Shown here: positions 542-55,521 of the stretch, piece by piece
Layout of the letters: every line of letters starts with the position of its first letter
How positions within the stretch are numbered: position 1 is the stretch's first letter
From: Stylophora pistillata
Lineage: Eukaryota
Direction: 5' to 3'
Length of the DNA stretch: 64,000 nucleotides
NCBI RefSeq assembly: GCF_002571385.2
Contig: NW_019218252.1
Span: forward strand, 4,181 to 68,180
Made by a program: the position numbers and the translations under genes
Notes under the pieces: generated by a model
Database searches by the model: none
The model's input: the letters and a program-made list of their open reading frames with translations, nothing else
Told to the model about the DNA's origin: nothing

Positions 542-2638
542 TTATTCTGCCTTTAAGCTATCGACGTTCAATGGCAGATAGCACAAAACCGCTTTTTGGT
601 CGATCTTTCCTAAATTTTCCCACTCGTGAAACACATTCAAAGGTAAGGGATAAACCTCGGCTGGCGAAAATCTAATTCCGCTATCAATTGGAAAATTGTT
701 TATCATAAAATAAACTTTCCCTTCTATTTCCAATGCGTTAAGATCATTTGGAGGAATATGATTTTGTCGAATAATAGACCAGGAGTTGTTCTCCTCGTCA
801 TAAACCTCAACAGAGGCTCCACTGCCAACAGGTGAGCCACATCTTTGGGTAACCGATTCAGATCCCCCAGCGACACAGAGTTTCTCGTTTACTGCCAAAA
901 GACTTGATCGATAATGAGGATTTCTGGTTGGTTCCGTGAGTTTCCATTTATTTGTCCTTGGGTTGAAAAAATGCACTTGAGCCGGTACCGGTTCATAGTA
1001 AGAAGGACATCCTCCTAAATGACCATGAAGTACATATAAACGTGATTTGAAAATAATCGATGCTTTACCGCGAAATGAACCAGGAGTAAACCGATCTGGA
1101 TTGAAAGATTTTATACGCTACCTCTGATTTGTATTCAAACTCAATCTGTGAGGTGGTTTCGATTCATGGATTGCATAGATATAATCACCCATTGAACACA
1201 AGCAGTCAGTCTTAAAATTAAACCCTGGAATTGTTGGTAATGTATCCCAGGCATTATTAACTGTATCATAACTATACATAACAAAATCTTTCTCCCTTTT
1301 TGCGGCTACATACAGGTGATTACCGACGTACTCTGCACAGTAACACTCAGTTGCCTCAATCAGTCGGGCCATGAACGGCAGAGGTCTCCATAATTTTGTT
1401 TCAGCATCAAAGTAATGCATCTCTGCTTGCTGCTGAATGGCAACAAGAACCTAAGAAGACGTAAAGGAAGAATCATTTGATAAATTTCAATATATGAAAA
1501 TCATTTATGTGTGTATTGCGGTTTCATGAAATGTAAGAAAGCGATCCTCGCAGTAATAAACTTTACTAATATGGAAATAAGTGGAAATAAGGCCTGAAAA
1601 AAATTCAGACCCGTACGAGATTTGAACTCATGACGGCTGCGATACAGGTGCAGTGCTCTGGTCATTAGATTGGTTCGTACAATTAAAACGGTAAAATGCT
1701 CTCTCTTCAATGAAAAAAATTTCCTCTAAGTTTCATGATGCGCCGACCACACCTACAACTGTGACTGACGCTTTTGACGTAAATGTGACAGTGAAAAGTG
1801 TTCTTACCGGTTTCGAGGACCTTGCCTTAGTTTTCTCTGCTGCGAACTCAGGCCTTCTTAAAGGCAGGTAGCTGTACAAGAGAGATGAATACAAGTGCAT
1901 GTGAACCTCTGGATCTCGCTGCATTTCCTCTGTATCAAGTTCAGCGATCAGCTCCCTAATATTTACCAAAGCTAATCGCACTGCTCCAATTACTTTGGCA
2001 GCAAAAGACATTCTCTCCTCCTTCTCGTGTTTAATCCATCGCATCACCGATTGAAAGATGAACGTTTCCGAAGGTGCATTGAGGTCATCTCGACTTAGGA
2101 GGCTGAGTAACTGATCGCCGCCGATATGAGCCAAAAATTCCTCGCTTTCGCAAACATCTTTATACTTCTTAGCCATTTCACTCTCAGTAGCTTCTTTTAG
2201 ACCTTTAAGGCCATGGCTGTGAGCAATTTCCCAGATACGAGAGTAAGTTTCAAAATCAAAGCGAAGTTTAACGAACTTGGTCAGCAAGAAATCACAACAC
2301 TGTTGAACAACAGTCGTCACTTGAAGGTGATCTGCTGCCGCAAGAACTTCAAACACATTTTCTTCGTTAACCTGAAGGGTTCCAGTGTAGATGGAGTCCA
2401 GTATAATGTTTAAAATATCAGATAAAATGCTTTCATCTTTCAGCTCGATTACTTCCTGGCTCGCTTCTTTCATTCCATCTGTAAACATGGCGTAGAAATA
2501 ATCGCTATTCGCAGCCAGAACAATGCGATGAGCTGGAAAGATGTCTTCCCCCACTTTTAAAGGAACGTCAGTGAACTGCTCCTCGTCTCTAAACTGGGCA
2601 CATTTGGACAGGAGAATCTCGGAATTGTTTACGACCAT
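542..2638 (-). CDS. Kelch-like BTB-BACK-Kelch protein, paralog 1 (~579 codons); one in-frame TAG, possible pseudogene or null allele
   Basis: Exon 1 2638-1808 has BTB ([17 protein letters not shown]) and BACK, donor CCG|GTAAGA. Exon 2 1450-542, acceptor TCTTAG|GTT. ORFs 1118-1420 and 542-976 are the same frame, separated by TAG 1120-1118 (NQR*RIKSF). AATAAA on the - strand at about 349-344. Confidence 0.85.
1520..1680. repeat. Partial copy of the tRNA-like palindromic repeat family seen at 39753-40014
   Basis: Shares gcgatcctcgcagta...cctgaaaaaa(a)ttcag...gtac..ga.t.gaac....tgac...tgcgatac with the left arm of that element. Confidence 0.6.
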
Positions 2639-2740
2639 TTTGAAAGAGGAATTAACCGATTCCGGAGGAGCAGAAACCGGGGCGAATGTTGTCCTTACAC
2701 GATCGCGTGACTAGGAAATAAAATAGTCACGCTACACTAG

Positions 2741-4560: not shown

Positions 4561-4730
4561 GATTTTTCTATTAAAATCTATGAACTATTGAACGGTAGTA
4601 CTGCTTCAATCTACTGATTTCTGACAACTTCCCTTGGGTGTGAACATTTGCTGCAAACTAAGACTTGGTACCAATAATAGATAAAAAATTCCCTTCTCCT
4701 TGTGGTTAAAGGCAAATACATCACCTACTC

Positions 4731-4985
4731 AGGGTTTGTAAAAGCCTTGAAAGTCCTTGAAAATGCTTGAATTTAAAAATAAAAAATTCAAGGCCTTGAA
4801 AGTAGTTGAATTTGAGGACTTAAGGGCTTCATTTTTGCAGTGCTTTTTCTTTAAAAATTTTCAAGTTGAAAATTACAGTACTTTCATGGAAAAGCTGAGA
4901 AATAGTACTAAATAATTTTAAAATCACTTATGCAAACCTTTCCAAAAGTGGTCCTTCAATTTTCTAAAACTTGGCCTTCAAAGTC
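4731..4985. repeat. Degenerate non-autonomous DNA-transposon-like repeat
   Basis: agggttt start followed by repeated (g/t)ccttgaaa / cttgaattt submotifs. Confidence 0.4.
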
Positions 4986-5630: not shown

Positions 5631-8188
5631 TTAATTGTTCTCAAGCTCATCTGAAGCCTCATAATTTTCTGTCAATTCCTGTTTTGTTTGATCAGTCTTA
5701 GTTCTGTTCACAGGCATGTAAACAAACACTGCATCTGTATCATGCTGAGAAATTGCTTTCCAATCTTCAATATTGACATGATAAACCTCCTCATCTCCAA
5801 TTCTGATTCCGCTGTCAAACGCAACATTTCCAAGTATAAAGTAGATGTGGCCCTCAATCTCCACAGCTCCAAAATTACCAGGTGGTATGTGAGGTTGCGG
5901 AACAGAATGCCATTGGTTATTTTCTTCATCATATACCTCAACATGACTGGATGGTATAAGTCCCCTCTGTCGCTTGCTGGGTGGGTCTGTTTTACCACCT
6001 GCAACATACAATCTTCCCCCAGCCACAAAGGCACAGGCTTGGGTGTGGCTGTAAGCTGTTCCCGCCAACTTTGTCCATTCATTCTTCATTGGATTAAATC
6101 TGAACACCCCATGATCTGCCCCTCCTTTAGCCCAAGAGCCACCAATAGAATAAATACAGTCATTGTACACAGCCACGGCACAGCCATAGAGGCCTTGATC
6201 TACATGGAAGGAAAGGCGCTGCCATATTTTCTTTGAGAAGCTAAATCTCTCGGAAACTGCACTGTGATTAACTTCACTGCCACCAATAAGGTACAGAAAA
6301 TCTTCAAGCAAGCATACTTGGAAATCACAATGTGTATTCCTCATAGGTGGTAATGCTTTCCAAGCATGAGTATCAAGCTGGTGTTGATGCACATCTTTCT
6401 CATCAAAGAGGAACAAGTAATTTCCAGTGTACAGTGCTGCTGGTGTGATTTGAAGGCTTGGTAGTTCAAGACCAGGAAATGGCTGCCATCACTTTAACAC
6501 AGTATCAAAGTACTTAACTTCAGACAAGCATGACAATGAAACCAGGGCCTAAAAAATTAACAATGGTTGTAATTAACTTTTGAAAAAAAAAATGTTGTTT
6601 AAGTCAATGTTTTCTGTCAATTTTGTACTGTGATGGTTGCAAATTTTCTAAAACAAATTGAATGTAACAGTGATTCATATTTTTATCATAGAGCACTGAA
6701 GCCCATGTGTCCTTTAATTGAAAAGGATACAAAATGATCTCAGATGTGGTTTCTACACCATGGTTTGAACCAGGCCTGAAATAGCTGCACGATCATTGAA
6801 GATGTGAGCTTAAAGAACAAAGGAAGAAATGGAAATAGCTGCAGTCCTCTAAAGGATTGCTTATTGACGGAGTTGGGTTAGCCTGTATTTCATGACCTAT
6901 TGCCAAATATTTTCCCATCTGGCACTCCTTCTCAGACACCAAGTACCTGATTCCAATGTAATTGCAAAATTAGAACACAGAAGCAGGTAACTGAGTATCA
7001 ACATAGCCGAGGCTATAAGAGAGGGGCTCCTGGGGAGGGGGGTTCCTGGTGAGGGGGGCTCCTGGGGAGGCAGGCTCCTGGGGTGCATACCAACCCTTCC
7101 TCCTGTTGCTAGCTTTCATCTGAAAAGTATTAACATGTAATGAATAAAAAAAAAAACCGTACTGAGACACTGCCAGTGTAGGCCAACCCTCACAGAAAAA
7201 TCCCCTCTCATGCCTCTGACTTGTGATCAACACACTCTAGCAGATCAAGAATGTAACCTAAGTTCGGTTTGCTTTAGGTCATCTCCCTCCCCAGCCCTCA
7301 AACCATGTATGCATGCAGCAAAACTGCAAGGGACAAAGTACTCACCTTTGATGAAAGGCGTGGCATTCCCTTCTCTTGAGCAAATGGAGAAGACAAAAAG
7401 GGCCGGACGTGCTGTGATAAGCTGTTGTACATGAGCGAAAAACACTCAGGGATGTCTTTAAACTCCTCCGATTCAAGTTCGGATAAAACAACCATTATGT
7501 CGACAAGTGCCAAACGAACTTTGTTCAGCAGTCTTGGTGCAAGTGGCAATCGGTTCTCTTTATCGTGCTTTATCCAAGAGATCACGCTTGTGAAAAGGAA
7601 CGTTTCTGAGGGAACACTTAGATCGTTACGTGGAAGGAGAAGCTCTAGCTCGTCCGCCTTAAAGTTCTCCATAAATCCTTCTTCCTCGCAAATTTCGCCA
7701 AACTTCAGAGCGAGAGCTTGGAGACTTTCTTCACGGAGTTCCGTCAAATTATGCCGATCGGCGACTCTGTGAATTTTTAGTCGAGTTTCCACTTGGAATT
7801 TATCTCGACTGAGGTTATTACCAATGAATGACGAGCACTTCTTAACTACGCTAAGTATCTGCAAATGATCAGCAGCTTCTAAAACGTCTAGTACATTGTC
7901 TTCGGTAAGCGGGAGAATCGAGGAGTAGATGAAATTTAAAATTATTTCGAAGGCCTCTACGGTTAAATCTTCTCCTTTAAGTTCCACCTCATTTTGTGTA
8001 CTTTCTTTCGTCTCGGTAGAAAACATTGCATCAAAGTAACGGCTCGAAGTAGCCAATAAAACTTTATGAGCGTGGAATATCTTTCCTTTGACGCGTAAAA
8101 TGACGTCGGTATAGCTGAGGTTTTCGCGCATTTTCATCAAATTTTTAAACATCTCGCGCGAATAGGCCAGGTCTAATTCTTCTTCCAT
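5631..8188 (-). CDS. Kelch-like BTB-BACK-Kelch protein, paralog 2 (~586 codons); one in-frame TGA
   Basis: Exon 1 8188-7346 (FHAHKVLLATSSRYFDAMF; donor AAG|GTGAGT). Exon 2 6548-5631 (acceptor TTTTAG|GCC) reads ALVSLSCLSEVKYFDTVLK*WQPFPG...LYLIGG...IYSIGG...LYVAGG, with TGA at 6491-6489. Same phase-0 intron position as paralog 1. Confidence 0.88.
7021..7085. repeat. G-rich short tandem repeat in the Kelch-2 intron
   Basis: Four gg(c/t)tcctgg units separated by G runs. Confidence 0.7.
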
Positions 8189-10852: not shown

Positions 10853-13800
10853 ATGAGGAAATTAAACCTCGGAAAGCTACGTTGTTCCACACAGTCAGCC
10901 GCCAGTAGTCAGTCTCTAAGCGGTTCATACGCAAGAAATCAGTCACAGACGACTATTTCCAGTTTTTTCATCACTAAACCTTTGGTGAACAATCCTTGCT
11001 CAAGTGAAACCGGCAGGAAAACAGCTGATGGAAGTAAGCTCACAAAAAGTGCTAAGGTATGCTTGTGGGTAAAACAGCTTTTCATCTGTACAATGGCATT
11101 GTTTTTTTTTAACTGATATTGCACGAAGATTTATAAAAAGCTTATTTGAAGTTTATTTACATCGCGTTCGGGCAATCATACAAAGAACTATTTAACCCAG
11201 CCCTAGGCCTCCGAAGCCCCTTGGCAATTGCCACTTCCGNATTTTCTTCACTGTTTGTTGAACTTGATTATTCTAGAACCTTTGCGTGCAAGTCAGTAGC
11301 AAAGATAAGTAGTTCCCGTGTGTTATCCATGCTACAATGAAGCAATTGTTTTGCCTGTTGGAAGTGGGCTCCTAAATCTACAATCCTTGTAATTTCTCTG
11401 ACACTTCCAGAAACTTCCTTGATAACCTTACATTTGACAAGGGAAAATGAGGCTAATGCAGATTTTGATATATTTTTATCAATTTATTTATATATATTTT
11501 TTTTTAACTATTTGTCAAAACGTTAGAGGTGTGCCAGTGATGTAACTCACAGTGAAGACAAGGACAGTTCAAGCACACAACATTCAAAAAGGCAAAGAAT
11601 CAATCTGGATCTGCATTCCTTAAAGGAATATGTAGTGGAAGATCGTGTCACACTGGATAATAAGGAAGAGCTGAGTTGTTCTACAATGGCTAAATTAAAC
11701 TGCTTTAGGAAAGATTCAAATATCCCTGATTCACATGGTGACAAAAAGCTGAGAAATCTGCGTGTCACAGAAAAACATGGAGACAGAAAAGAGCTGGATA
11801 AAAATCATAACAACATGAGTATTGGTGGAACTAGGGATGATGATGTTGGTGATGGTTTAGAACCAATGGATTTTAATGGCAGTGCACATCAGGAAAACTT
11901 AGACGTCACTAAATTTGCTTGTACATCACATCTATCTGGAAGACCAATTCAGAACATCAAAAATGTAGCAGAAAAGAATGAAACAGAAAGATGTAAACCT
12001 GTAAACTCAAGGACTAAATCCACATATACACCTTTAGAACTTCAGTTTCTTGAAGTAAAATCCAAGTACCTTGATGTTATTTTACTTGTGGAATGTGGAT
12101 ACAGATACAGATTCTTTGGAGAAGATGCTGAGGTATTATATAATAGTTATATAAAAATTGATATACCTTATTCTGGTAAATACCACCATTATCACAGGGA
12201 ATGTAATTGTCTTCATGGCTTTAAACTCAGCCCTCTTTCCAAAAGCATTGTTAGAATGATAATCTATATTTATTATAACATAACCAAAGTGAAGCGCGCG
12301 CTCTGATTGGTCAATGTAGTGTCCCCCATTTGCCCATGGGTGTACGCTGCTGACTTGAGCAAATGCAAAGACTATTTTTCCGTGCNTTTACCAATGTATC
12401 GTTCGACGGCTCTTCAGCGAATATTTCCATCAACTTTCAGTCGAATGTTCATCCCGACGATTCAGCTAACAGCAGTTGCTTTTAGGCTTGGCTAAATCTG
12501 TATATCAATAATGATGATGATGATAATTATATTAATGATAATGACGATGATTATGATATTAATGACAATAACAGACCAAATACTTGCACCAAGTATGGAT
12601 ACTGCTTTCTTGAATTTTGGTTTACAAGTTAGTCCACTTACCCGTTACACAGCACAGTCACACTTCTCTTTTTTTTTTCCATATCTTGACAATCTACAAG
12701 ATCTTTTTCCCTAAAACAATATCTTAATGTGCGTTTTTGGTGGTGCTAACTTGTTCTTTGCACTGTCCTTTTGTTATTGTTCTTGTTTTTTATTGTTGCT
12801 TCTTTTCTTCTTTTTGTGATGTCCAGGACATTTTGCGAACTACGCGTTCCAGTTTTGCGCGTGGGGCCCGTTAAATATTAGTTTAATTTTTGTTTCAGCT
12901 TGCTGCTAAGGAACTGAACATCATGTGCCACTGGGATCACAACTTTAAGACAGCAAGCATTCCTAACCACAGGCTGCATGTTCATGTCAAGAGGTGAGCA
13001 ATTATAGTGGGATATATTATTTGAAAGTTCCTACATCTCTTTCTGGGGTATCATAATGGTTCCCATGCCACACCCTCACACCCATACCCATAGTCCAGAG
13101 AAGCCATTGTGTTGTTTTTAAGGGTGAGACAGGTTTTAATGAAAGGAAACCTCTTGCAATATTCGGATGTACTTGGGAGGGATTAGCAACTTCTCCAGGA
13201 GATGTTGCCCCACATTCTGATTACCACTGCATGTGGCAGATTTAAGAAAAGGTATTTTAAGAATAAGAAATATGGTATATTTTTAACTTGATCTTTGAAA
13301 AAAGAAAGTTGTCACTCATTTACCACAAGAGGAGTACAAAGAAAAAAGGCTTGAAATCTTTGGATATTGGGGTCTATTGCATCTCTAAGCTACCAAAAAA
13401 TTTTGGGTAAATTAGGCCATTTATAAAGTTATAACAAGCACAAAACCAAGGGCAAGCTGGTGAGCCCGTATTTGATCCCTTTAACCTAGCAACTTTCGGG
13501 TATTGTATATGTATAATGAACACCAAATCTTTCCAGATTGGTCAGTAAAGGTTATAAAGTTGGAGTGGTGAAGCAAACAGAGACTGCTGCACTAAAAGCT
13601 GCTGGAGATAACAAGAGTAATCTATTCACAAGAGAACTACAGTCGCTGTATACTAAGACCACACTGGTTGGGGAAGGTATCCTTTGTGTGAGATTGTACA
13701 GAACTGAAATGGGGTGATGGGTGTGGTATGAGGGGTGAGGGGTGAGGGGTGAGGGTGATAGATGAGAGTTAAGGCTTACTTCTCTTTCATAAAAAATACA

Positions 13801-16800
13801 CCTGTAACTCTAATAAACCAAGAGTAGAACTAAAAAATGTACAACAATTGCTTTAATTGGTTTCTTTGGAGCTCATTCCACTTCTTAAATGCATAGCTTG
13901 AAAATTGTTCTTGGTCATTCTTGTTTGTTTGAGGTCAGTTTTTTTTTTTTTTAAGGTATTACTCCTTAATCCCTCACTTTCCACTTGCCTTCCTCAAACC
14001 TTAAATCCTCAATAATTTCCCATCTCTTGGACCCTCATCACTCCTTTGGCAAAACTTTGCCAGAATTAACTCTTGTGATATTTAGTATGCAATTCTAACC
14101 AAACTACAGCTATCTTAGAGTTACTTTCAATTCTATATTGACCTAAATGACACTAAGATATGAAGACTATGGAAGATTTAGATGAAGCAGACTCTGTGGA
14201 GATGGGAAGTGGATATCTTATGTGTCTTGTCGAAGGTGATCCTCAGGATTCCAAAATAAGCAGTGATAGAAAGGTGTTTGGCATAGTGGTAAGTAAATAT
14301 CATAATTGTGAAAGAGTTCCTCAAGGTCATCAAGTCTACCTTAAAGTTAACTTTTAACAAATCCTTGAAAAGTCCACTGATATCCCTAAAGAATTTGTGA
14401 GGTTGCTCTAAGGATCTGTGAGGTTTTTGGATAGATGCAATAGGTCCATTGCAAAGATCTCTGAGGTAGGTCCGTGCCTTTTGGATCCTAGAGGTACTCA
14501 CAAAGATCCTTGAGGAAGATCAAGGATCTTGATAAAGGATACTTGTGGTACTTGCAGAGAAACCATGACTCTATAGAAGATCGTATCTCAGTTTCTCATT
14601 CAGATGTAAAAAAGGATGTACATGTGTTTCTCTTGAATGAATACTTCCAAGATTCTCTGACCCTTAAACTAAGTCAACTAATCACATGGCTCAGTCCTGA
14701 CCAATTTTTGGTTTTAAATTTGATATTCAGGCAGTTCAACCATCCACTGGCAATGTCATATATGATGACTTTCAAGATGGACCAAGCTGTATGGAGCTAG
14801 AAACACATCTTGAACACATTTGCCCTGAAGAATTACTCCTTCCAGAATCTTTGACCATCCAAACAGAAAACTTCATCAAAGATTATGTTACAAGGGTGCA
14901 AAGGTCTGTCCATACTCCATGCATTCAGTGGATGCCTTTGAGACTAGAAAACATTTCCCTCAAACAAAAATTTGTGGGGGAGGGGGAGGGACTGTTTTGG
15001 TGCCAAAAATAATCTGTTTTCAAATTCTTTCATCAGCATTGCACTTGGCAAAATAATGTCATAAAACTTTTTTAAACAGCTCCTGCCTGTGTTTGAGAAG
15101 ATTATTGACTGCAGTATCAGTTCTCCATTAAACTAGACAGTGTGTTTTAATGATTTGATGTGGGGTTTGAGTGTGGTTGGGTGAAAGATAACCCCCACCA
15201 TGTTTCTGGAAAGTGAGAGGTGTGCTGTTAATAGCAGGATTTTTATAAAGAGATGTTGTAGCAGAAGGATAATATATAGAAATGGCAGAACAAATATGAA
15301 CCGCACAATCGCTCGATGTCTGAATTAAAAAAACCTCAGGTCATTCAATTAACAGGGAGAATTCTGGATATTATCCAGAGAATTCTTGGATCTCTCATGC
15401 TACCGTTGAACACCCTGTGATAGACTGAATGATCTTTTCTTTATGTAAATATTTATAAAACAAGCGATTATCTGCCATTCATTGTGGAATTGTTTTTATG
15501 ACTATCCAACTGGATCAACTTTGCCAGCTCTTTAAAGTTATAACTCTGATCTGGTTCTCTCTAGCCCTGCTATGAGCGGTTTTTTGTTAAAAACAAAAAA
15601 ACACTGTTACATATGTTTAAGAGGAAAGTTTAGTTCCTATCAATTTTTAATTAATTCTTCAAAAGTACTGATGGATACAAAAAAGTTAAAAGTGTTTGTT
15701 TGTTACTGTTGTGCAGACCAGAGGACAGTGTAAGGCTTGAAAGAATATCTGATCAACTTTTCGATCATTCCTCTTCTCTGAAATGCATCACTGAATTTTA
15801 TGGGGAACAAAAGCCGGTGAGGAATGAGGAACTCTGCAAAGTTAACATTACCAAAGAATTGCAGTGTAACGAGCAAGAAAACAATTCAGCATTGGAAATA
15901 ATCCTCAAACTTCCCAAATCAGTGCAGACAAGCTTTGCGGCACTTATAAAGTACCTTAAAGACTTCAAGCTTGAAAAAATTCTCAGATTGGCAAGGTACA
16001 GTATGTAAAAGTATTTCCTGATCAATGTATGTGGCAGACTTTATTAAATAGTGTATAACTAATTGATTCATGATTGACTCATTTTAGATTATTATCAATT
16101 ATTTTATTTATTAATTAAATGTGTTTTGTTTGACTTCACAGTAACTTTTCAAGATTTTCTGTAAAGAACAAATTTCTAAAATTGAATGGACAAACTCTGA
16201 GGAACTTGGAAATATTCAAGAATCAGGTATTTTGCTTGACTGACGTTTAGACTTGTCTAGGATGAATGACTTTCTGAATAACTCAACAACTCTAGAAAAA
16301 ACGACTTTAAAGTCGATAACGCGTCCTAAAAATGAAAAATTGTTGTGTTATTCTAAATGTAAATAGGTAGCTCCAGCCCACATGAAAATGCTAAAACTTT
16401 GTCATTTTATATGCAGACAAATGGTGGCGAAAAGTCGTCTTTATTCTGGGTCATTAACCACACAACTACAGCATTTGGGCGAAGGCTTTTAAAGAAATGG
16501 ATTTCTCAACCTCTGCGAGATGCCAGGTTCAGCTTTCTCTTTCCTACTTTGGTATTCAACGATTTTAACTTAGCACGAGGTTTGACCCGACTATTACAGG
16601 GCTGTTGTTAGCAGTCTGCGTAAATCTTTTCCACCCTCGACTACCGTTGTGTTCTATTTCTCTTTTTTGTCTGAATGAGATTGAGGTTATGTGTCACAAA
16701 CAACATATCAATTAGAGAAGGTGTCTCCGCTGAGAAAAATCGATGCATAACAGTGTAAGACTCGAAGAAATCCCTTAAACTGCTAATTTGTTTTCTGTTT

Positions 16801-19491: not shown

Positions 19492-19554
<63 letters not shown>

Positions 19555-41900: not shown

Positions 41901-44489
41901 CTACATTTTGCTTCAGTTTTTATCAAATCAAACAGAATAGATCACAGAAGACATCTGGATGAGGTGAGAATATCAATGACACAGTCAGCTGCACCTCGTG
42001 TGCCACTTTTCTGTTTTTACCACATTTTGACATCATCTGTGATTTATTACTGTACAGATGTACAGCAACAATTAATCTTAATGTTAATCTTTACAAGTGA
42101 ACAAAACTATAATGATATTTTAACATACATGTAAGGTCTTCTAGTGCTATACCTGCATATATTCCCAACTTTAATCCCTTAGAATGAATCTGAAATTAAA
42201 ATGGTACGAGTAATCTTAGAGAAAAATAGACATTTCTTTTAGGAAGAAACTCTACCAAAAAATACTTTTAAAAGGATTAAAGTATTGTAACAAACTTACG
42301 TAGTCAGCCAGAGCTTTCATTCCACTCGGAAATCTGGCAGGATCAGGCTGGAGTTGACCGTCAGCTGTTCGGTTATGAGACATCCAACAATCCTGCAAAT
42401 TTAAGTGACTTTTGTGAATTTTTTGACAAGTATTAGCAGGGCAGGTACAGAAAATCCCAAATTAGAGAATAAAAAATGAGTAACAGGGAAGGCCTATCTA
42501 ATGTCTCCACTCTTAATTCACTTGCAGGTAACTATTAAACATGACAGTTAAGAAAACCAGAAAATTGAACTAAACAAATTTGACAAATGCCCAACTAGAA
42601 TCTGAAAGGAAGAGGTACCAATCCAGAGAAGAGATTGACAGATAACTTCTCACTATAATATCTATATATTATCCAGCAAACAGGTAATGAGAATACTCAA
42701 ACTTATCAGGTAGAAGTTGTTACCTTGATCTTACACCAAATTCTCCTAACTAATTTACGAGGAAATGTGTAGCAGCTAAAGAGGAGAATTTACAATCAGA
42801 TCTTAAGAATTGAAAGGTTAAACAGCAATCCACCTGAGTGTGAAGATCCTTTCTTTGCTTTAAATCTCACCACAACAAGATCACATCTCTTTACCTTCCT
42901 GAGTTTATTCCCTACCACAAAGTTAATCCATGCATTTGAATTATTACTACAAGCAGTTGACATCTCTCAGGGATAACACCTCCTCTCCATAGATCCAAAC
43001 TCACAAAATAATTGGTCCAAACAGTCCTCAGTTATCCTCAGATCTCTACAATTTTCAGAGTAAACCAAACAGCAAATGACGATGAATTTAAATAAACAAT
43101 TATCAAACCTTACATCAATAGACACATATTCATAGCCAACATCCTTAAAACCATCTTCAGCCATACGAGATGCCATATCCATGAATAATTTTTCACTGAA
43201 ACAGTTAAAGAAAGAAACATTTTAAACTGCACCAAACTTCTCCATATTACAGATCAGTGTGCAGACTTGCCGATTGCATAAGCCTCCTATCAACCCAAAG
43301 AACATTACAAATTTTGTTTTCCATTCTAATTTCTTATTCTAATTTATTCCATGACTTGCACCAAGTTACTGATTTAAAGAACATTAGTCAAGAGGTTTTA
43401 TACATCACTGATTTGAGAAAAAGGACAGAATTTCACATGTTTCCACCTGCAATATTAGCCACCCATTACACCATCAGCAGCCACTTATAGAAAAAGTTAT
43501 AAAAGCCTCTGCTTAAAGGAAGTCAAATGTGGACAAACAAAGCAAACACTCTCACCCCCTGCTTTGTTTATAACTGCTGTAAATAAACATAAATCAATAA
43601 ATTAAGCAGTTACCCAATGCAGTTGTCAGGGTCATTTTTGCAGTCTGTGTTACAACGGAATCTCTCCCAGTCCATCCATCCCACTATAAAAGGAAAGAAA
43701 CGCTGCTGTAATAAACAAGGGTGTGGGTCCATTATAGCAATTGTCAAAAGCAACCTAGCTACCCCTCCCTCCCCCTAACTCCACTAATGTAGGACATCTC
43801 CTTGGAAAATATTGTCTTCATCCTTGATTAATCTCTTATCCTGTCCATATGGTGGAAAACATCACCCTGTCCCAAGAAAACTCCAGGAGAACTTATTCAC
43901 TTTTTTGAGCTTCATCTTGTCTGTCCTCACCTATTAAGGTAAGCACTTCTCCTGCAAAGAGTGACTGCTTTGAACAAGTTCTCTACAACTGAATTTTAAT
44001 CATTTTGCTTGTAAATGCTGGAAAGAGATTCTTCTTAAAAAAAGCAGTTGTCCTAGAGGCAACCCATTGATTTCTTTATCCAAGAACTGTATTTAGTATG
44101 GGGCTGTGCGGAAATCTTTCCCAGCTTTCAATTGACTTCTAAATGAAGTTTAACGAACTAAATTAGCTAAAAAAAAGAAAAAAAACCAAATCAACTTTGG
44201 GGGAAAGAAACCAGTTAGTCATAGTCCGATAGAAGAAGACGTAAGATTTTCTTCTAGAACACTTGACAAGCTGATTACAAGTCAGTGATCAGCTGTGTAT
44301 CATGTGATATATATAACCGCAACTGATCTGCGATATTCTTCCCGAAAGTTGCCCAAAACTAATATATATTAGCAACTTACTTGGTGGTGTTAAGGCTAGA
44401 CCATTGTCAAGAGACTTTACAAATAAGTTTTCCTGCCATGATGCCATAAAAACAATTAGTAAGAGCACGCAAGACAGTCCGGGCGCCAT
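38969..44489 (-). CDS. NAGA: Alpha-N-acetylgalactosaminidase (GH27), paralog 1 (14 exons, ~412 aa); apparent +1 frameshift in exon 11
   Basis: Exons 44489-44381, 43683-43614, 43195-43114, 42392-42300, 42189-42153, 41749-41685, 41526-41362, 41043-40984, 40913-40812, 40487-40413, 40134-40069, 39540-39483, 39346-39236, 39115-38969. [31 protein letters not shown] (nucleophile), FSCSWPAY (NAGA-type S/A rather than GLA E/L), WRNYDDI, WNDPDM. Confidence 0.9.
39753..40014. mobile_element. Palindromic tRNA-like insertion with a 14-bp target-site duplication
   Basis: Arms 39751-39853 and 39864-39966 (2 mismatches). taataaatgattta at 39739-39752 and 40015-40028. Confidence 0.88.
42640..42822. mobile_element. 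MITE, TTAA-ended family
   Basis: Similar to 10095-10285 and 53917-54128; ends aaaggttaa. Confidence 0.65.
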
Positions 44490-48018: not shown

Positions 48019-51000
48019 TCACAACTCATAATGTATAGGAGACAATTTGACCATGACTACCCCACTAGGGTTAACTTTAGCCCTGAAGCTTTTCTTGAAT
48101 GTGCCGAGGTCCTTATGTTCAAAAAGATCGCGTGCCTTCGCCATGATGGTAGGCAGACCAACCTAAAAGAAACAATGATAACAATAATATTGAATTAGGA
48201 ATAGGAAAATCCCTCTCACGCTAGAAGGGAGAAAAAGCGAAATAAAACATCTGTTAAGGTTCGTCATGTCTGTATTCCAGCGAAGTGACCCATCAAGATA
48301 GAAGTTTATCCCGATTTCTATGGCATATTGCGACTCGGAGTATCATTGCCAGTCTATCAAAAGGTCATTGCGTTCGACAATCAATTAACCACGGGTTATC
48401 AAAGGTTAGTTTTTTAAAAGGGTTAAAGAATAAACTTCAACACTGGAAATGGTTTATTTCACCAAACACCGTCGGTTTGAAATTTAAAACATCGTAGGCC
48501 CTAAGGTTTGAGTTCACCGTAACACCGCAATGCGAGTTGTTCTTCATCGCAATACATGTACCGTATTGAAAAAAGGGTCAACACCGCAAACCCCAATGTC
48601 CCCCTGTCTCTAGAATCGAGATTTCGTTTTGTTATCTTTGATGAAGCTATCAGTCAGTTTTTGTTGAGTCAACTTTCATGAAAATTCGCCACCACCCATT
48701 AACATTACAAGGTAAGAAGAGTCACCGTATGTGAGAGTAAACTTTCACAGTTTAAGAAGTTAAACCACCCACTTCGGAAACCATATCTCTCTAAAGATGT
48801 TTCCACTCAAGTGCTAAACATAAATCGTCTCAGCGATTTGCCAAATTATACAGACGCATTAAAGCTAATTTTCAACATTTCAAAGACTCCATGTCAAAAA
48901 ATTTATATTTTAGCTGTACCTCGTGGAAGAACGCCTCAATGTGAATGGGCTGGTCAGCTCTACGACTGGACAAAACCACAGCAACAGATCCATCATGCAG
49001 CGGACGACACCACACCTCAGTAAACCTCCTGGGGGACTAATCAACAATTATATAGAGTTTACTAGTCAGAAATGAGTTGAGAATATAGCCGATGAAGCAA
49101 ATACTGGTATAGCGAGTTTCTCATATTAATGTCCAAAGTATTCCCAAATTGCATACATTTCGCGTTACATCTCAGTGCTCCGATAAACTCTTCCGTGACC
49201 GAAATCGGAAGCTAGTCTTTAAAATCAGACTAGCGTTTGAATTAGATTACTAGTTTGAAAAATGAAACACTTGTGTCTAAAATCGGACATTTGTGACTAA
49301 AATCGTACAATAGTGCAGGGCTTGAAATAAAGGCCCCTTCAACGATAATGTCCGGTCAAAATTAGGTCAAAATTATATTTGTAAGGAAAAATTTAGAGTT
49401 TAAGTCAAGACCTACTAGTGTCTAAAATCGGTCACTAGTGCCTAAAACCGGACACCAGTGCTTAGAACCGGACACTATAGTCTAAAATCGGACACTGGTG
49501 TCCAAAATCGGACACAAGTGTGTTTTCATTTTGGTTTTTCTCTTGTTACTATCGTTGTTGTTGTTGTTTGTTGTTTTTTACTTGTTTTCCCTATCCGGCA
49601 CAAATGCATGATCCCCTTTGTGTTAAGAAACATTTCTTTGTGAGGAATCAGAAGACAGATTCGTTCCTGTTTAACATAAAAACACTCTCGCCTGTACTTG
49701 GATTCTAACCTGAGTCACTCGTCGCCCCATCTTTCCCAGTTTGTCCTGATTCACATCTATCACCTCCCTGACAAAAAAGGGAGAGAAACCAAAAAATTGA
49801 ATAAAAGGAAAATCCTCTGTAACTTGGCTTGGAAGAGGAAAGTGGGGAGTAGCGATGACGCAATGGTAAGAATGCTCGCTTCCTTCTTCTGGTGCCTGGG
49901 TTCGATTCTCAAACCTGACATTACATATGGTTTTAGCTTTTTGTTGATTCTCGTTCTCAGTCCGAGAGTTTTTCCCAGGGTTCTCAGCTTTACCTTCCTG
50001 AATTCAACCTGGCAGCGCTGACAAAGGCCACTCTGCGAGAGTCTTACTTTTAACTTCCAATTTATCTATTTCTATATCAGTGATGATCCAGCTGTTTCTT
50101 CACTGAGTTATTTTAAATCAACTGAACCTCTTACATGTTTAATAATATTTCCCTGGCCCATGGAGCAATATCACGAAGATCGTTTGACATCATGAGAGGC
50201 TGTAACGTAAAAAAATATTACAGAAAACATCAAAATAAAATAAATGACCAATAATCATCTGTCTCCAAACTACATGTAAAATATCTACCAAGATCGCATC
50301 AAAGATCAAAGGACAATTACAGAAAATTGTGCCATAACTTACAGCAGCCAGAATTGCCCAGAGAGCAAACTGTGACTTAGACTGTTCTTAGCTAAGACCA
50401 AAATTTCCAATCAACAGCTGATGAAACAAAACATCTGGTGAGCAATTGATCATAACTCATATTCTACTGTGTAAATGAACGAGTGAGTTTATTCATGCCT
50501 GACATACGTACTGACCTGAATTTTTAGTTTCTTAATTTGCACCAATGAAGTACCATGCAAGTTACTCCGAAAGTTATGAATTTTACGTCTGGTTGCTATT
50601 TTGAACTGTTTTCCCTTCAGTTTGGAATTTTCAATAGAAAAAGAGCATGACTTATAACATGAAGCAGGTAGGTCAGCGGAAACCAAATTTTCGGAATTTA
50701 TAAGTAAACAGGCCCTTTCTAAGGTAAAAGCAACAACTTAGGAAAGTTCAAAAACGATGCCAGTTGGTTAGAGCAGGTCACTTGGTGCCCTCCACAGGCC
50801 CTTTTTGGATACTGGCCATCTTTGTTTGTGTCATGTATCCCAAATGAAAGCCTTCTCAAGTGGAGAATCACTTATGACTGTAGGGTGGAGGTTGTGGTTT
50901 CAAAGTGCTGGATATGAAGCTGGTGTGGCAGGTCTAAAGTCAGGGCTCATGGGTTGTTAGCGCAACAGTACAACATTGACAGGCAGTGGCTTTGAGATCA

Positions 51001-54000
51001 AGTGTAACACAAATGATGCCTTTAAGTCTCTATGCAGTTAGAACACCTCACCTGGTCGGGATCATTCCATTGTCCTGGTCCAGCAACAGGTATCATTTCA
51101 TGTTGGTGATCACCATACCATTCAACAATTCTAACCATACTGAGCCAAGAATCCTTGGACATATGATAATAAAAAAGTTGTCAAGAACAAAGAGAAAGCA
51201 ATAATGATGCAGTACAGGGATTAATTACTAGAAGAAATTTTGGTTCAAAATGATGAAATAAACATCACTGCTTTTAGTAGTTACTTTATAATGATGCGTG
51301 TTACCTGTATGTCATTGTAATTCCTCCATAAATTACAGTGCTTTGCAATGAGCTGGTAATTGGGCTGGCAAGCAAATTAAGAACATTCATAATCACAATT
51401 GATCCTTGCAGCTAATTTGCAATAATTACAAAGTAACAGCATAGACGTAAAGCTATATTTTATATGTGAAAGTCCCTCCAATTCAATTTAAGTGGATCCT
51501 AAAACCCTAAAACTTGACAGAAAAAAGTATCTGGCTCCTGAGAAAGTTACTTCACTTCTGATATGGTAGTGAAGGCTGAAAGTTGTCTGCAAATAAACTA
51601 AAAGTTATAATCTTACACAACTAACATAGAAACATAATCAAAATAAGTCTATGCTCTGTGACACTGATAGGGGCAGGCCAGTGTAGTGGCTAGATAGTTA
51701 TTTAGCTGAGATTCATAAAAAAATTCATAATGATTGCAAAATTACCGTCATTCCACCCCACACTTGATACGCAGGCCAGCTACAGGAGAACACAATATGT
51801 CTCCCTGTTTCATTCAGTGCCCTTGTTACTGTGGGATAACCCTCGTCAAATGTAAGAGGATCAGCAAAACAACCGTCCATCTTAAGATAATCCACACCCC
51901 AGTCAGCAAACAACTACAAATGAAAAACAAAACAGGAACATATATAACAGAGTGATGAATTTTATCTCTCACATGTGCCTACGCCAGCAAACAGGTACAG
52001 CAGAAACTGCGACATCTATCTTGCTTGCAAACCACGGAAATTATTATTGTATGATATGCAAGTGGTAGTGTTTTCATTTGGTTTGAGTATTGTATTTTAA
52101 GGAGTTTTGCATGCAAATTGGTTTAACTGGGATACCATTTCAATGATGTTTCAGACAATGATTTTTTAGAGAGTATTATGTAACGGTAAACATCAGTGAG
52201 CAAAGAGGTACCTGCATGTCCTGCTGAATGTAGTCTATGCTTCCTGGATAACGCTCACAGGTTAGATGACCATAATCTAGAAGAAAACAAAGTTCAAGTC
52301 AGAGCAATTATTGTAAGAGATTGACAATTACTATTTTGACCTTGTACCTCTGGGAAATTTAGATAACATAAACGACAGCCATAATGAAAAAACTATGTCC
52401 GGTGTTCCTTAGTGTAGAGTGCTTAGGTTGTGGTACTAATATTACCTCTTGTTTAATTTTTTTCACCAACTAATTTCACCATGGAAAATTGATTTGTTAG
52501 AATTACGAATAAAACCAACCAGGCCACAGTGCTTGACACTTTTTATGGTCACTACACCACATCGGACAAGTCTTAGAGTTGTTTTAGTTGCTCACAGACT
52601 GAGATGTTTCACATGCCCCTGGCAATGAGGCAAGAATTAGTGTTGAACACTGGACAAGGTGGAAAAGATGTTACAGGGACAAATTTGGTTAAAACATAAC
52701 AACAAAATCCAATTCCTGAGTGTTCTGCCATTTCATGAACAGTTTACCTGCATATAATCCAAACTTGAGACCTTTGGAATGAATCTGAAGAAAATAATGA
52801 TTGATAAAAGAAAATTCAATAAATCTGTGATGGAGAGTCGCAAATTCCAGAAAATGGTTGGAACTAAAGAGAAAGAGTCCTGGTATTGTCTGTTTTGCAC
52901 AATAGATGACATTACTTTACAAAGAGGTTTGATCTGTACATCACTCAACTTATAATTTACTGTTAGAAAGAATTTATTTCATTGGGGTTATGTGGGGTAA
53001 AAATCATCAAATCACCAGGAAGCTAGAGAGGAGTACAAGGATTGGAGCGTGTGTCTAATTTAATTTAATTTAATTTATTAGCTTGGCTGACAAGTAGGGA
53101 CCCCCTAACAGCTTGCACCAATTACTGCGGGCCCTGGTACCCACCAATCCCACCCCAGGGGAGGACATCCATCACACAGTGATCTCGTGCATGGGAAATT
53201 AATGTCTCCTACCCCTACCCTGCAGGAGACGGGACCTATAATTTATTCGTCCTTATCCGAGAAGACTAGAGTGTCTATCCATTTCCTGATATTATAGAAA
53301 GGTAGCACATTCTCCTCAGTAATTTTAAGACCTTGAGTGTTGGTCCGGCCGGGCTTGAACCCTCGACCTCCTGCTCAACAGTCTGGCACTCTATCCATTA
53401 AGCTAACCAGGAGGTGGTTGTCTCTCTTTCTTCCCACTGGCTTACATCCCCCCTTCTCCCAACCTCCTCCCCTCACCCCTACTGTGGCTCTAGTTTCCCT
53501 CACTCTGGTTCCAGTTCAGTGCCCAGCTTGCCATAAATTATTAGTTCACTTTGTTGTTTTTTTTCTTCCTTGCCCTGAGAGTTGTTCTTCCCATTCTGCT
53601 GTTTTCCTCCTCCCTCCTCCCAAAAACCAACACTCCAAATTCAAACTCAATCGGGAGACATTTAAAAAAGAGCCTGCTGCCGATGTGCCTCTGAGTCTAA
53701 TAAATTCCACTCTACTATTATCTACCTTTATTCTTAATCATTATTATCACTTACATAATCAGCAAGCTTCTTAATTCCACTTGGAAATCTTGTAGGATCT
53801 GGCTGAAGATCACCTTCTAATGTGCGATTGTAGGAAGCCCAGCAATCCTGATATATAAGTCACCACAGTGTTAAAATTAGGAGATATAATAATATTGTAA
53901 AGTGTGTTAATTTGTTATAAACCCTTTCACTCCCCAGGAGTTATCAAAAAGGAGTTTCTCCTTACAATTATCAGCACTCTCCAGCAAACAGGTGATGAGA

Positions 54001-55521
54001 AAAAGACACATACCACTTTAGAAATATCACTTTTGATTCAACACCAAATTCTCCTACCTTAAATGAAAAAAAATGTATCAAAGATAGAGAAGGGGGGTGC
54101 TATACAGATCTTGATAGTTTGGGGGTTAAAAATAAAGATGGTACGAACAAAGAATTCTCACTGCTGTGGCTTTCATTGCTTCTCATCTATACTGTCAGGA
54201 TTTCGCTAAGATACCTGAACTTCCCCTCTTTGGGAAAAAACACCAAAAGCCAAAAGCCAAAAATTCAGTTTTACCAGAAAACAGTGGACAACAAAGTATA
54301 CTATGTGTAGATGTATACACCATGGCTAAAATCCAGTTTCATTATTTTTTATGATTTATTATTCAATTGGCCAGTTTAAATTCTGAACTACAACCTACTA
54401 CACAGGTGAGGTGGTAATTATATATATACTAGTAACTGTCAACCTTACTACATGATAAAGTAAAGTCTGTTTACAAGCCAAGTAGCCCATCAGGCCTGTG
54501 CTTAACTCTGGTTTCTGTTGCATGAAGCAACTTGGAGTATTCTACTCTTCCATAGATGCCTAAGAACACAACACAATGTCCCCAGTGAGCCAGGGTTTGA
54601 ACCCAAGACCACTTGATCCAGAGTTGTCAGGGCACTAACCATGAGGCCATCACCCCTCGCACTACTACATAATAACTTACATAATACCATGTTCTACACG
54701 CATCAAATCATAAGTAGCTAAAAAGTTTTGCATGGCACTCACGTCTATACAGACGTATTTGTATCCAGCTTTTTGAAAGCCATCTTCAGCAATGCGATCA
54801 GCCATTTGCATGAACAATTTTTCACTTCAGAAGAAAAAAAAATAACGATTTATAAAATACCAAAGAAGGAAGGTGAAATCTTAAAATCTAGTAAACATTA
54901 TACTGTTTACATATCTAACCTCAAAAAAATGTTTTTCCCAGCTTTACCCCTCATTCACTAGGAATCTCAGAGTGCATATTGTGCACATTTCACTTCATCG
55001 ATAAAAATAAAGTTCTTAAAAATTTCACGGTATTTTAAGAGGTATATTCAAATAATGAGATTGCAAACAAGTTTGAGCTTGCGCTTTAACGTTTTAGCGC
55101 CTTCATAGTACCCGGTATTTAAACTAAAGGCTTTTTAACTTTTACCTGACACAATTTTGTGGATCATCGTCACAGTCTATGTTACATCGAAATCTCTCCC
55201 ATGCCATCCATCCCACTGAAAATAATGTCATTGGGAAATCATTTATAGGGTTGTTTGTTCAAATAGAGACTTAGTTTAATGAAATATGAAAACGCGTAGC
55301 ACAAAAGTTGTGCATCCAGTCAAAACAGCTGATAGAGGAAAAAAAAACATTCTTGTATCAATATCTAAAAAAAAATACGGTCTCTTATTTCTCACTTATC
55401 TGCAACTAACTATTAAAGGCGTACTTGGTGGAGTGATGGCTAAGCCATTGTCAAGGGCATGTGCTGGAAATATGACCAGAAATTTTAAGAAAATAATCAA
55501 ATTTCCAAACAGCGCCGACAT
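48019..55521 (-). CDS. NAGA: Alpha-N-acetylgalactosaminidase (GH27), paralog 2 (14 exons); in-frame TAA in exon 10
   Basis: Exons 55521-55425, 55215-55146, 54824-54743, 53847-53755, 52784-52748, 52276-52212, 51913-51746, 51364-51305, 51153-51052, 50417-50343, 50199-50135, 49767-49710, 49036-48920 (acceptor uncertain), 48162-48019. [22 protein letters not shown]. Exon 10 reads [16 protein letters not shown], with TAA at 50390-50388. Confidence 0.88.
49265..49520. repeat. Degenerate 20-bp tandem repeat in two blocks
   Basis: Unit tctaaaatcggacactagtg, clearest at 49415-49520. Confidence 0.8.
49843..50065 (+). mobile_element. Degenerate tRNA-derived SINE related to 56579-56860
   Basis: tggtaagaatgctcgcttcc...gggttcgattc...catatg...ttgttgattctc...tccgagagtttttcccagg. 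Confidence 0.65.
53056..53418 (-). mobile_element. tRNA-derived SINE, copy B (same family as 47612-47965)
   Basis: Collinear with copy A, roughly 90% identical by eye; (AAATT)n tail. Confidence 0.85.
53917..54128. mobile_element. MITE, TTAA/CCC-ended family
   Basis: taaaccctttcactcccc ... gggggttaa. Confidence 0.65.
54455..54662 (-). mobile_element. Internally deleted tRNA-derived SINE of a third family
   Basis: Minus strand tggcctcatggttagtgccc...gggttcaaaccctgg...acattgtgttgtgttctt, with a (cttta)n-like tail. Confidence 0.6.

What the first reader, a model, noticed from the sequence alone, without database searches (positions are those of the whole stretch)
542..55521. Five otherwise intact genes each carry a single ORF-breaking lesion
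Seen in sequence: Kelch-1 TAG (1120-1118), Kelch-2 TGA (6491-6489), MSH3 TGA (17191-17193), NAGA-1 one extra base (~40134-40128) and NAGA-2 TAA (50390-50388). In each gene the remaining exons and catalytic motifs are preserved. That is 5 of the 10 apparently complete genes, including a normally single-copy repair gene. Inference, three options: (a) consensus errors, since the window has N bases; (b) a recently silenced haplotype or segmental duplicate that is starting to decay, such as a non-recombining region or a redundant subgenome in a clonal or polyploid coral; (c) recoding, unlikely overall because all three stop codons plus an indel are involved. Three stops could each be one third-position C>A change (TGC>TGA twice, TAC>TAA), as is NAGA-2 IAVNQD>IDVNQD, which would fit oxidative damage.
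Basis: partly seen in the sequence, partly recalled or inferred. Interest (0 to 1): 0.8.

Follow-up and report, generated by a model that had tools for sequence, protein, structure and literature searches.

The report
Five broken genes in coral reference
Five otherwise complete genes in this stretch of the published Stylophora pistillata coral genome each carry one disabling mutation; three could be checked in other Stylophora samples and none is seen there, so they are private defects of the reference coral or of its assembly, not a new coding mechanism.

Summary
All five lesions are in the sequence at the stated places. The window is the GenBank v1 assembly of the coral Stylophora pistillata. 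The deposited Kelch-2 protein model matches it and starts its second exon just after the TGA.

Contigs assembled from other public Stylophora runs carry sense codons at all three testable sites:
- Kelch-1: CAG (Gln), 5 alleles.
- Kelch-2: TCA (Ser), 2 alleles.
- MSH3: TGC (Cys), 3 contigs plus an outgroup.

The NAGA-2 TAA is TAT in another genus. NAGA-1 has one extra base right after the acceptor of exon 11; no other Stylophora sequence covered either NAGA site.

The C>A oxidative-damage idea holds only for MSH3, and the NAGA-2 "IDVNQD" motif is ancestral. The 11-N gap lies in MSH3 intron 16 and breaks no reading frame. No SECIS element was found.

Four nonsense changes in 9.4 kb of coding sequence is about what roughly 1% unconstrained divergence would give. 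Tests for relaxed selection point that way but are not significant.

- Most likely (about 0.5): real loss-of-function alleles of the sequenced Gulf of Aqaba lineage. Four of them sit in redundant tandem genes.
- Next (about 0.3): consensus artefacts.

Only the original reads can settle it. Interest is modest.

The parts
542..2638 (-). Kelch-1: BTB-BACK-Kelch gene with two coding exons (2638-1808 and 1450-545, then the terminal stop codon at 544-542)
   Evidence: Pfam finds BTB, BACK and Kelch domains. Exon ends were read from the sequence.
1118..1120 (-). Kelch-1 in-frame TAG. Five other alleles have CAG (Gln).
1121..1123 (-). Kelch-1 AGG (Arg), directly upstream of the TAG. All five alleles and all four outgroup sequences that cover this column have the kelch-repeat Trp (TGG in the three alleles with DNA).
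5631..8188 (-). Kelch-2: BTB-BACK-Kelch gene (exon 1 8188-7346; ancestral exon 2 6548-5634, then the terminal stop codon at 5633-5631). It equals GenBank PFX17510.1 apart from the skipped start of exon 2.
6489..6491 (-). Kelch-2 in-frame TGA. Other alleles have TCA (Ser); outgroups have Ser, Thr or Asn.
6483..6484 (-). Downstream AG that the deposited gene model uses as acceptor. Exon 2 then starts at 6482, which drops 22 codons including the TGA. The site has a weak pyrimidine tract. The model comes from AUGUSTUS.
6288..6290 (-). Kelch-2 codon CTT (Leu). Both alleles that cover it and all six outgroups have Val in this kelch motif.
10853..28512 (+). MSH3: about 23 coding exons. MutS domain I is in exon 2 and the Walker A motif is in the exon near 26718-26780.
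   Evidence: The outgroup contig L007 shows the same gene order.
17191..17193 (+). MSH3 TGA, the first codon of exon 11 (17191-17316). Three Logan contigs and the outgroup have TGC (Cys).
17101..17570 (+). Locally very divergent haplotype patch (about 5-7% from three other contigs), bounded by a 1-bp indel and a 20-bp indel. It contains MSH3 exons 11 and 12.
24129..24139 (.). Assembly gap (11 N) inside MSH3 intron 16. It lies in no exon.
38969..44489 (-). NAGA-1: GH27 alpha-N-acetylgalactosaminidase-like gene with 14 coding exons.
40128..40134 (-). NAGA-1 CCCCTTT at the start of exon 11. It is one base longer than in NAGA-2 and the outgroup, giving a +1 frameshift and a stop six codons later.
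48019..55521 (-). NAGA-2: tandem paralogue of NAGA-1 with 14 coding exons.
50388..50390 (-). NAGA-2 in-frame TAA in exon 10 (50417-50343). Four related ORFs have Tyr here, and the outgroup DNA has TAT.

Best explanation
The five lesions are real, recent loss-of-function variants of the sequenced coral lineage. That lineage is Stylophora pistillata clade 4 from the Gulf of Aqaba, kept in culture in Monaco. The assembly froze them into a haploidised Illumina reference.

Each gene carries a single young lesion on a haplotype that is about 1% diverged from other sampled Stylophora haplotypes, and locally 5-7% diverged. Four of the five genes are members of tandem, redundant families: two genes of a large BTB-Kelch expansion and two NAGA paralogues. 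Null alleles of such genes are tolerated.

The fifth lesion truncates MSH3 after about half of the protein, before the ATPase domain. It should be a null allele unless a weak in-frame GAG acceptor 15 nt downstream is used.

Shown here:
- The lesions exist in the deposited assembly.
- They are derived relative to other alleles or to an outgroup: all but NAGA-1 by direct comparison, NAGA-1 by comparison with NAGA-2 and its outgroup ortholog only.
- The three that could be tested are absent from other datasets.

Inferred, not shown:
- The lesions are in the animal rather than only in the consensus.
- Whether they are heterozygous or fixed.
- Whether they share one haplotype.
For: Source of the window:
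- PFX17510.1 (Kelch-like protein 12, S. pistillata) matches Kelch-2 exon 1 at 281/281 residues and exon 2 at 283/284 from just after the TGA.
- So the TGA was in the sequence that the submitters annotated.
- The assembly used about 221x paired-end plus 96x mate-pair Illumina data with ALLPATHS-LG (PMC5730576). At the usual accuracy of such assemblies, four random errors that all create stops would be very unlikely.

Derived state of the lesions:
- Kelch-1: CAG in 5 alleles.
- Kelch-2: TCA in 2 alleles.
- MSH3: TGC in 3 contigs and in the outgroup.
- NAGA-2: Tyr in 4 related ORFs.

The lesions ride on natural haplotype divergence:
- In Kelch-1, window-private changes are as dense in coding sequence (8 in 906 bp) as in noncoding sequence (3 in 391 bp). 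They comprise 6 nonsynonymous and 2 synonymous changes, and they hit the kelch Trp that is kept in all other sequences.
- In MSH3 exons 11-13, four nonsynonymous changes are derived on the window branch and none on the other branch. Polarised noncoding changes are 5 versus 6.
- The expected number of stops is 4.4 per 1% neutral divergence over 9.4 kb.

Redundancy: the Kelch searches returned over a hundred related proteins, several of them on the same contig, and at least four tandem BTB-Kelch genes lie in the syntenic outgroup locus.
Against: - No independent sequence carrying any of the five lesions was found. The Kelch-1 ORF that ends at the TAG is not on record.
- The reference colony's own reads could not be examined.
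- The contrast between coding and noncoding change on the reference branch is not significant (12:8 versus 4:8, p=0.27).
- Kelch-2 evolves fast on both branches (4:5 polarised amino-acid changes in exon 1).
- Five hits in 64 kb is far more than ordinary genetic load predicts, so a regional cause is still needed. That cause could be biological or technical.
- The assembly pipeline included digital normalisation, HAPLOIDIFY and three rounds of GapFiller.
Confidence: 0.5

Rival explanations
1. The lesions are consensus or assembly artefacts. They would have been introduced by the v1 pipeline (khmer digital normalisation, ALLPATHS-LG with HAPLOIDIFY, iterative GapFiller) and do not exist in the animal.
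For: - All tested lesions are private to this one assembly.
- Some lesions sit in small clusters of private changes. The Kelch-1 Trp>Arg change is 3 bp from the TAG. Kelch-2 has two-base changes at 6288/6290 and 6262/6263.
- The NAGA-1 indel lies in two adjoining homopolymer runs.
- The window has single N bases and a gap.
- The substitution spectrum around MSH3 exon 11 is unusual: C<->G makes up 9 of 32 differences against about 8% in window-outgroup comparisons.
Against: - Coverage was very high and Illumina only.
- Four random errors that all create stops would imply about 1% error in this region.
- Where changes can be polarised, noncoding changes are not one-sided (5 window-derived versus 6). 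The odd spectrum affects both branches.
- Window-private changes in Kelch-1 are no denser than ordinary differences between alleles.
Confidence: 0.3
2. The scaffold is a degenerating extra copy: a segmental duplicate or an uncollapsed, silenced haplotype block. An intact functional copy would lie elsewhere in the same genome.
For: - There is one young lesion per gene across neighbouring genes.
- The number of stops fits neutral decay.
- Window-branch changes in Kelch-1 and MSH3 look unconstrained.
Against: - None of the independent contigs at three loci resembles the lesion-bearing copy. If a duplicate were fixed in the species, about half should.
- The 90% cluster of Kelch-2 holds only one NCBI protein.
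- A duplicate private to the reference colony cannot be excluded.
Confidence: 0.08
3. The genes are still expressed as full or near-full proteins through recoding or rescue. Possible routes are selenocysteine or readthrough at TGA, A-to-I editing of stops, or alternative acceptors or exon skipping that remove the lesions.
For: - The MSH3 TGA replaces a Cys codon, which is the classic Sec/Cys relation.
- In-frame escape routes exist. Kelch-2 has the AG at 6484-6483 used by the deposited model. MSH3 has a GAG acceptor 15 nt downstream. NAGA-2 exon 10 is 75 nt and phase 0-0, so it could be skipped in frame.
Against: - No SECIS element was found at the gathering thresholds or in permissive scans downstream of the stop codons of the two TGA genes.
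- Other alleles have ordinary sense codons.
- TAG, TAA and a frameshift are also involved.
- The escape acceptors are weak, and using them would delete conserved strands.
- The Kelch-1 and NAGA-1 lesions have no in-frame bypass.
Confidence: 0.03

Closest known systems
Loss-of-function alleles and polymorphic (unitary) pseudogenes carried by a reference individual
   Same: There is a single disabling change in an otherwise conserved, complete gene. Where it could be tested (three of five), the change is absent from other individuals. Members of redundant gene families are enriched.
   Different: Five such changes fall in 64 kb and include a normally single-copy DNA-repair gene. Zygosity and population frequency are unknown.
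Degenerating non-recombining or sheltered haplotypes (supergenes, clonal Meselson-type allele divergence)
   Same: Neighbouring genes each carry a young lesion. The number of stops equals the neutral expectation for the divergence of the haplotype.
   Different: There is no evidence here for suppressed recombination, for a second haplotype or for clonality. The test for relaxed selection is not significant. HAPLOIDIFY may have mixed the two haplotypes.
Apparent pseudogenes created by draft-assembly consensus errors
   Same: The lesions are private to one draft assembly. One of them is a homopolymer-length change. The gene models were bent around a stop.
   Different: Most of the lesions are substitutions in deep Illumina data. 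The noncoding divergence is symmetric between branches, which errors would not produce.
Selenoprotein genes (TGA read as selenocysteine through a 3' SECIS element)
   Same: In MSH3 an in-frame TGA sits where relatives have Cys.
   Different: No SECIS element was found. MSH3 and KLHL proteins are not known selenoproteins (from my own knowledge). The other stops are TAG and TAA.

Membership tests
BTB-BACK-Kelch (KLHL-type) proteins: Kelch-1 and Kelch-2 | N-terminal BTB/POZ domain followed by a BACK domain | tested here: met
   Pfam BTB at 2e-29 and 1e-28; BACK at 1e-22 and 6e-21.
BTB-BACK-Kelch (KLHL-type) proteins: Kelch-1 and Kelch-2 | C-terminal Kelch-repeat propeller encoded in an uninterrupted reading frame | tested here: not met
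   Kelch repeats are present. The frame is broken by TAG (Kelch-1) and TGA (Kelch-2) inside exon 2. Kelch-1 also lacks the repeat Trp that all compared sequences keep.
MutS homologue MSH3 | MutS domains, with MSH3 rather than another MutS homologue as best match | tested here: met
   MutS_I hit and a weak MutS_III hit. Exons align to human MSH3 residues 589-632, 770-847 and 848-884, and only MSH3 chains were returned. The Walker A motif is visible in the translation.
MutS homologue MSH3 | Continuous ORF through the lever and ATPase domains | tested here: not met
   TGA is the first codon of exon 11. The ATPase exons lie downstream of it.
GH27 alpha-N-acetylgalactosaminidase / alpha-galactosidase: NAGA-1 and NAGA-2 | Melibiase_2 catalytic barrel with the two catalytic Asp motifs | tested here: met
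   Pfam Melibiase_2 at 5.6e-22 and the precomputed PF16499 annotation of the NAGA-2 relatives. Both copies keep the K-(L/M)-D-G-C and R-N-Y-(D/N)-D motifs in translation. That these motifs hold the catalytic residues is from my own knowledge of GH27. Specificity for GalNAc versus Gal was not tested.
GH27 alpha-N-acetylgalactosaminidase / alpha-galactosidase: NAGA-1 and NAGA-2 | Uninterrupted ORF through the barrel and the C-terminal beta domain | tested here: not met
   NAGA-1 has a +1 frameshift at the start of exon 11. NAGA-2 has a TAA in exon 10.
Selenoprotein gene | SECIS element in the 3' UTR of the gene that holds the in-frame TGA | tested here: not met
   No Rfam match at the gathering thresholds in the window. 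No SECIS match at E<=1 in the scans of 28300-29750 and 4300-5700, downstream of the stop codons.
Pseudogene (non-functional copy evolving neutrally) | Disabling lesion that is derived relative to orthologues or other alleles | tested here: met
   For NAGA-1 the comparison is only with NAGA-2 and its orthologue.
Pseudogene (non-functional copy evolving neutrally) | Relaxed purifying selection on the lesion-bearing branch | tested here: inconclusive
   In Kelch-1, window-private changes are 8 coding (6 nonsynonymous, 2 synonymous) and 3 noncoding. In MSH3, nonsynonymous changes are 4:0 against 5:6 noncoding. Combined Fisher p=0.27. Kelch-2 is symmetric.
Pseudogene (non-functional copy evolving neutrally) | Loss of expression or of protein product | not testable with these tools
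   No reads or transcript data of the reference strain could be reached.

The most novel reading that the evidence does not exclude
The reference (Monaco/Aqaba) S. pistillata strain carries a sheltered, degenerating haplotype block of at least 55 kb. The block would be kept heterozygous by clonal growth, an inversion or a private duplication. Every gene on it would have drifted without selection for about 1% of sequence divergence. The block includes a null allele of MSH3, so this widely used laboratory coral could be partly or fully MutS-beta deficient.
Probability: 0.12. Interest if true: 0.65.

Novelty: new member of a known kind. Interest (0 to 1): 0.3.

Why it matters
The S. pistillata v1 assembly is a standard coral reference, and the Monaco strain is a standard laboratory coral.

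If the lesions are real:
- The reference misrepresents five genes that are intact in other Stylophora samples.
- The strain carries at least one null allele of a mismatch-repair gene. That bears on studies of somatic mutation and microsatellites in corals.
- A cluster of five would point to a region where selection is not acting on one haplotype.

If the lesions are artefacts, they flag a low-quality patch, and gene models bent around stops, in a much-used annotation.

Either way the practical message is the same. Do not use these five gene models, or this window, for evolutionary-rate or gene-loss inference without checking the reads.

Tried and rejected
Look-ups that found nothing:
- Exact look-ups found nothing on record for the intact GPCR, the Kelch-1 ORF ending at the TAG, PFX17510.1 itself, the NAGA-2 exon-9 ORF and an MSH3 exon-6 ORF.
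- As a result, neither the reference haplotype nor any lesion-bearing contig could be found in independent data. No other Stylophora sequence covering either NAGA site was obtained.
- The word search with the ORF after the NAGA-2 stop returned only more distant taxa, at 67-85% identity.
- The MSH3 exon 11 peptide has no match among solved structures. Its alignment to the human Cys therefore rests on the coral DNA comparisons only.

Ideas rejected:
- Oxidative C>A origin: only one of the four stops fits.
- NAGA-2 IDVNQD as a lesion: the motif is ancestral.
- An error burst in MSH3 17101-17570: polarised noncoding changes are symmetric.
- Gene conversion from paralogues as the source of the Kelch changes: the compared kelch sequences all keep the Trp and Val that the window has lost.
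- Selenocysteine: no SECIS element.

Tests of asymmetry gave direction only: p=1.0, 0.31 and 0.27.
Full report
**What the window is**

The sequence is eukaryotic, with about 39% G+C and many introns. A 90%-identity protein cluster found with the second exon of Kelch-2 contains GenBank PFX17510.1, "Kelch-like protein 12 [Stylophora pistillata]". That protein matches the window at 281/281 residues over exon 1. It matches at 283/284 over exon 2, starting just after the TGA. The window is therefore part of the published S. pistillata v1 assembly.

That assembly was built from colonies collected in the Gulf of Aqaba (clade 4) and kept in Monaco. It used Illumina paired-end and mate-pair data after digital normalisation. 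The assembler was ALLPATHS-LG with HAPLOIDIFY=True, followed by SSPACE and three rounds of GapFiller. Genes were predicted by AUGUSTUS with transcript hints (PMC5730576).

- N 24129-24139 is flanked by a (TACA)n stretch and a T16 run.
- It lies in the roughly 7-kb MSH3 intron that also holds a nested GPCR gene, a retroelement fragment and a GPCR pseudogene.
- The MSH3 exons on either side align to human MSH3 residues 770-847 and 848-884. No exon is missing and no reading frame crosses the gap.
- The two single N (11240 and 12386) are intronic.
- I did not fill or look up any N.
- Linkage across the gap rests on scaffolding, and HAPLOIDIFY can mix the two parental haplotypes. The five lesions therefore cannot be assumed to lie on one chromosome copy.

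**The observation**

All five lesions are present as described.

- Kelch-1 has TAG at 1120-1118, 110 codons into exon 2.
- Kelch-2 has TGA at 6491-6489, codon 20 of exon 2.
- The MSH3 TGA at 17191-17193 is the first codon of a phase-0 exon, directly after the acceptor AG. The previous exon ends in phase 0 at 16974 and aligns to human MSH3 up to residue 632.
- NAGA-2 has TAA at 50390-50388, in the middle of the 75-nt exon 10.
- NAGA-1 exon 11 begins CCCCTTT. It is one base longer than NAGA-2 and an outgroup orthologue, with the same donor. The canonical phase-0 junction then runs into a stop after six codons.

The remaining exons that I could recognise are open. They keep the GH27 catalytic motifs and the MutS Walker A motif. 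I checked exons one by one and did not join them into spliced models, so not every splice phase was verified.

**Independent sequences**

Contigs assembled from other public sequencing runs (Logan) are 97-99% identical to the window at the DNA level, introns included. They carry sense codons at every lesion that could be tested.

| Gene | Window | Other sequences | Source |
|---|---|---|---|
| Kelch-2 | TGA | TCA (Ser) | SRR13196840 and a second allele |
| Kelch-1 | TAG | CAG (Gln) | five alleles; three contigs with DNA, from SRR10968407, SRR13022832 and SRR10968449 |
| MSH3 | TGA | TGC (Cys) | SRR21099428, SRR21098854, SRR21098856 and a syntenic contig of another genus (ENA ERZ25067556) |
| NAGA-2 | TAA | Tyr in four related ORFs; TAT in outgroup DNA | other taxa only |

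No near-identical Stylophora allele was recovered for NAGA-2, and nothing could be retrieved for the NAGA-1 site. No contig carrying any lesion was found, and the Kelch-1 ORF that ends at the TAG is not on record.

- The ancestral codons give C>T (Kelch-1), C>G at the second codon position (Kelch-2), C>A (MSH3) and probably T>A (NAGA-2). The common third-position C>A, oxidative-damage reading fails.
- "IDVNQD" in NAGA-2 is shared with the outgroup orthologue, so it is ancestral.
- The genes are not otherwise untouched. Next to its TAG, Kelch-1 has Arg where all other kelch sequences compared have Trp. Kelch-2 has Leu for a Val that all alleles and outgroups keep.

**Real or artefact**

Points that favour real variants:

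- About 4.4-4.9% of random substitutions in these 9.4 kb of coding sequence create stops. Four stops therefore imply about 1% unconstrained change. That is as much as the whole divergence between this haplotype and the others. It is far above the error rate expected for a deep Illumina assembly.
- In Kelch-1, changes private to the window are as dense in coding sequence (8 in 906 bp; 6 nonsynonymous, 2 synonymous) as in flanking noncoding sequence (3 in 391 bp).
- Around MSH3 exon 11, noncoding changes polarised with the outgroup split 5 on the window branch and 6 on the other branch. Nonsynonymous changes split 4 to 0.

This pattern suggests natural haplotype divergence in which the reference branch has not been purged by selection. 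It does not look like a one-sided burst of errors.

Points against, or limits:

- The numbers are small. The combined contrast of coding versus noncoding changes gives p=0.27.
- Kelch-2 changes fast on both branches.
- The substitution spectrum near MSH3 exon 11 is odd, with an excess of C<->G changes.

I therefore rate real reference-lineage loss-of-function alleles at about 0.5 and assembly artefacts at about 0.3.

- A fixed degenerate duplicate is unlikely, because none of the independent contigs resembles the lesion-bearing copy.
- Recoding is unlikely. No SECIS element was found, and all three stop types plus a frameshift are involved.

**Consequences if the lesions are real**

- Kelch-1 would lose most of its propeller.
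- Kelch-2 would lose its whole propeller, or 22 residues if the weak downstream acceptor of the deposited model is used.
- MSH3 would end before the ATPase domain.
- Both NAGA copies would lose the end of the barrel and the C-terminal domain.

Four of the five genes have obvious back-ups: a large tandem BTB-Kelch family and the two NAGA paralogues. Both paralogues are hit, however. MSH3 is the notable case.

**Known or new**

Loss-of-function alleles, polymorphic pseudogenes and assembly-made pseudo-pseudogenes in reference genomes are well known. I found no paper that mentions these lesions or an MSH3 defect in S. pistillata. The finding is a new instance of a known kind. Its only unusual aspect is the clustering of five lesions in 64 kb. 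That clustering is explained neither by ordinary genetic load nor, so far, by a demonstrated technical fault. Mapping the original reads would settle it within an hour.

Noticed in passing
window 3312-3983 (+): A 223-aa ORF with no Pfam match carries a 2A-like D-I-E-T-N-P-G-P motif near its N-terminus. It is probably part of a mobile element lying between the two Kelch genes.
   Followed up: no
window 20176-21144 (+) and 24658-25730 (+): An intact rhodopsin-type GPCR gene is nested in MSH3 intron 16, and the outgroup contig L007 has a GPCR in the same relative position. A second copy, about 60% identical, is spread over three reading frames with in-frame stops, so it is an old pseudogene with several lesions.
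   Followed up: partly
window 17101-17570: This patch is 5-7% diverged from three other Stylophora contigs and is bounded by a 1-bp indel and a 20-bp indel. It sits next to about 320 bp with almost no differences. Over the whole comparison that includes this patch (window 16454-17940), C<->G changes are in excess: 9 of 32, binomial p=7e-4 against the roughly 8% seen in window-outgroup comparisons. The cause is unknown.
   Followed up: partly
window 7346-8188 (Kelch-2 exon 1): The window and another allele (P0231) differ at nine amino acids in 296 residues. Polarised with the outgroup, 4 are derived in the window and 5 in the other allele. The family evolves fast on both branches.
   Followed up: yes
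window 9749-10681 (-): A small two-exon UPF0449-family gene lies between Kelch-2 and MSH3. The outgroup contig has the same family in the same position, between its Kelch-2 orthologue and MSH3.
   Followed up: partly
window 21311-22117 (+): A 269-aa ORF with an ALKBH8_N-type Pfam hit. It is most likely a retroelement fragment inside MSH3 intron 16.
   Followed up: no
window 31618-32781 (+) and 57690-59762 (+): Two long ORFs have no Pfam match. One is a 387-aa Gln-rich protein with a 30-bp tandem repeat. The other is a 690-aa Lys/Glu-rich ORF on a strongly purine-skewed strand.
   Followed up: no
window 46991-47131 and 49414-49521; 19481-19552: Tandem 20-mers occur between the two NAGA genes (7 copies) and inside a NAGA-2 intron (5 copies). 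A (TC)36 microsatellite lies in MSH3 intron 16.
   Followed up: no
outgroup contig ERZ25067556 ctg25928 (proteins P0122 and P0123): The closest counterpart of Kelch-1 exon 2 on the outgroup contig is called as two separate ORFs of 180 and 131 aa. It may be interrupted there too, or the two ORFs may be different paralogues.
   Followed up: no
window 50193-50459 (NAGA-2 exon 10 and the following intron): No Stylophora-like ORF reading through the TAA site exists in the protein collection, although such ORFs were found for Kelch-1, Kelch-2 and MSH3. This may mean that the TAA is widespread in the species, or only that coverage is patchy.
   Followed up: partly
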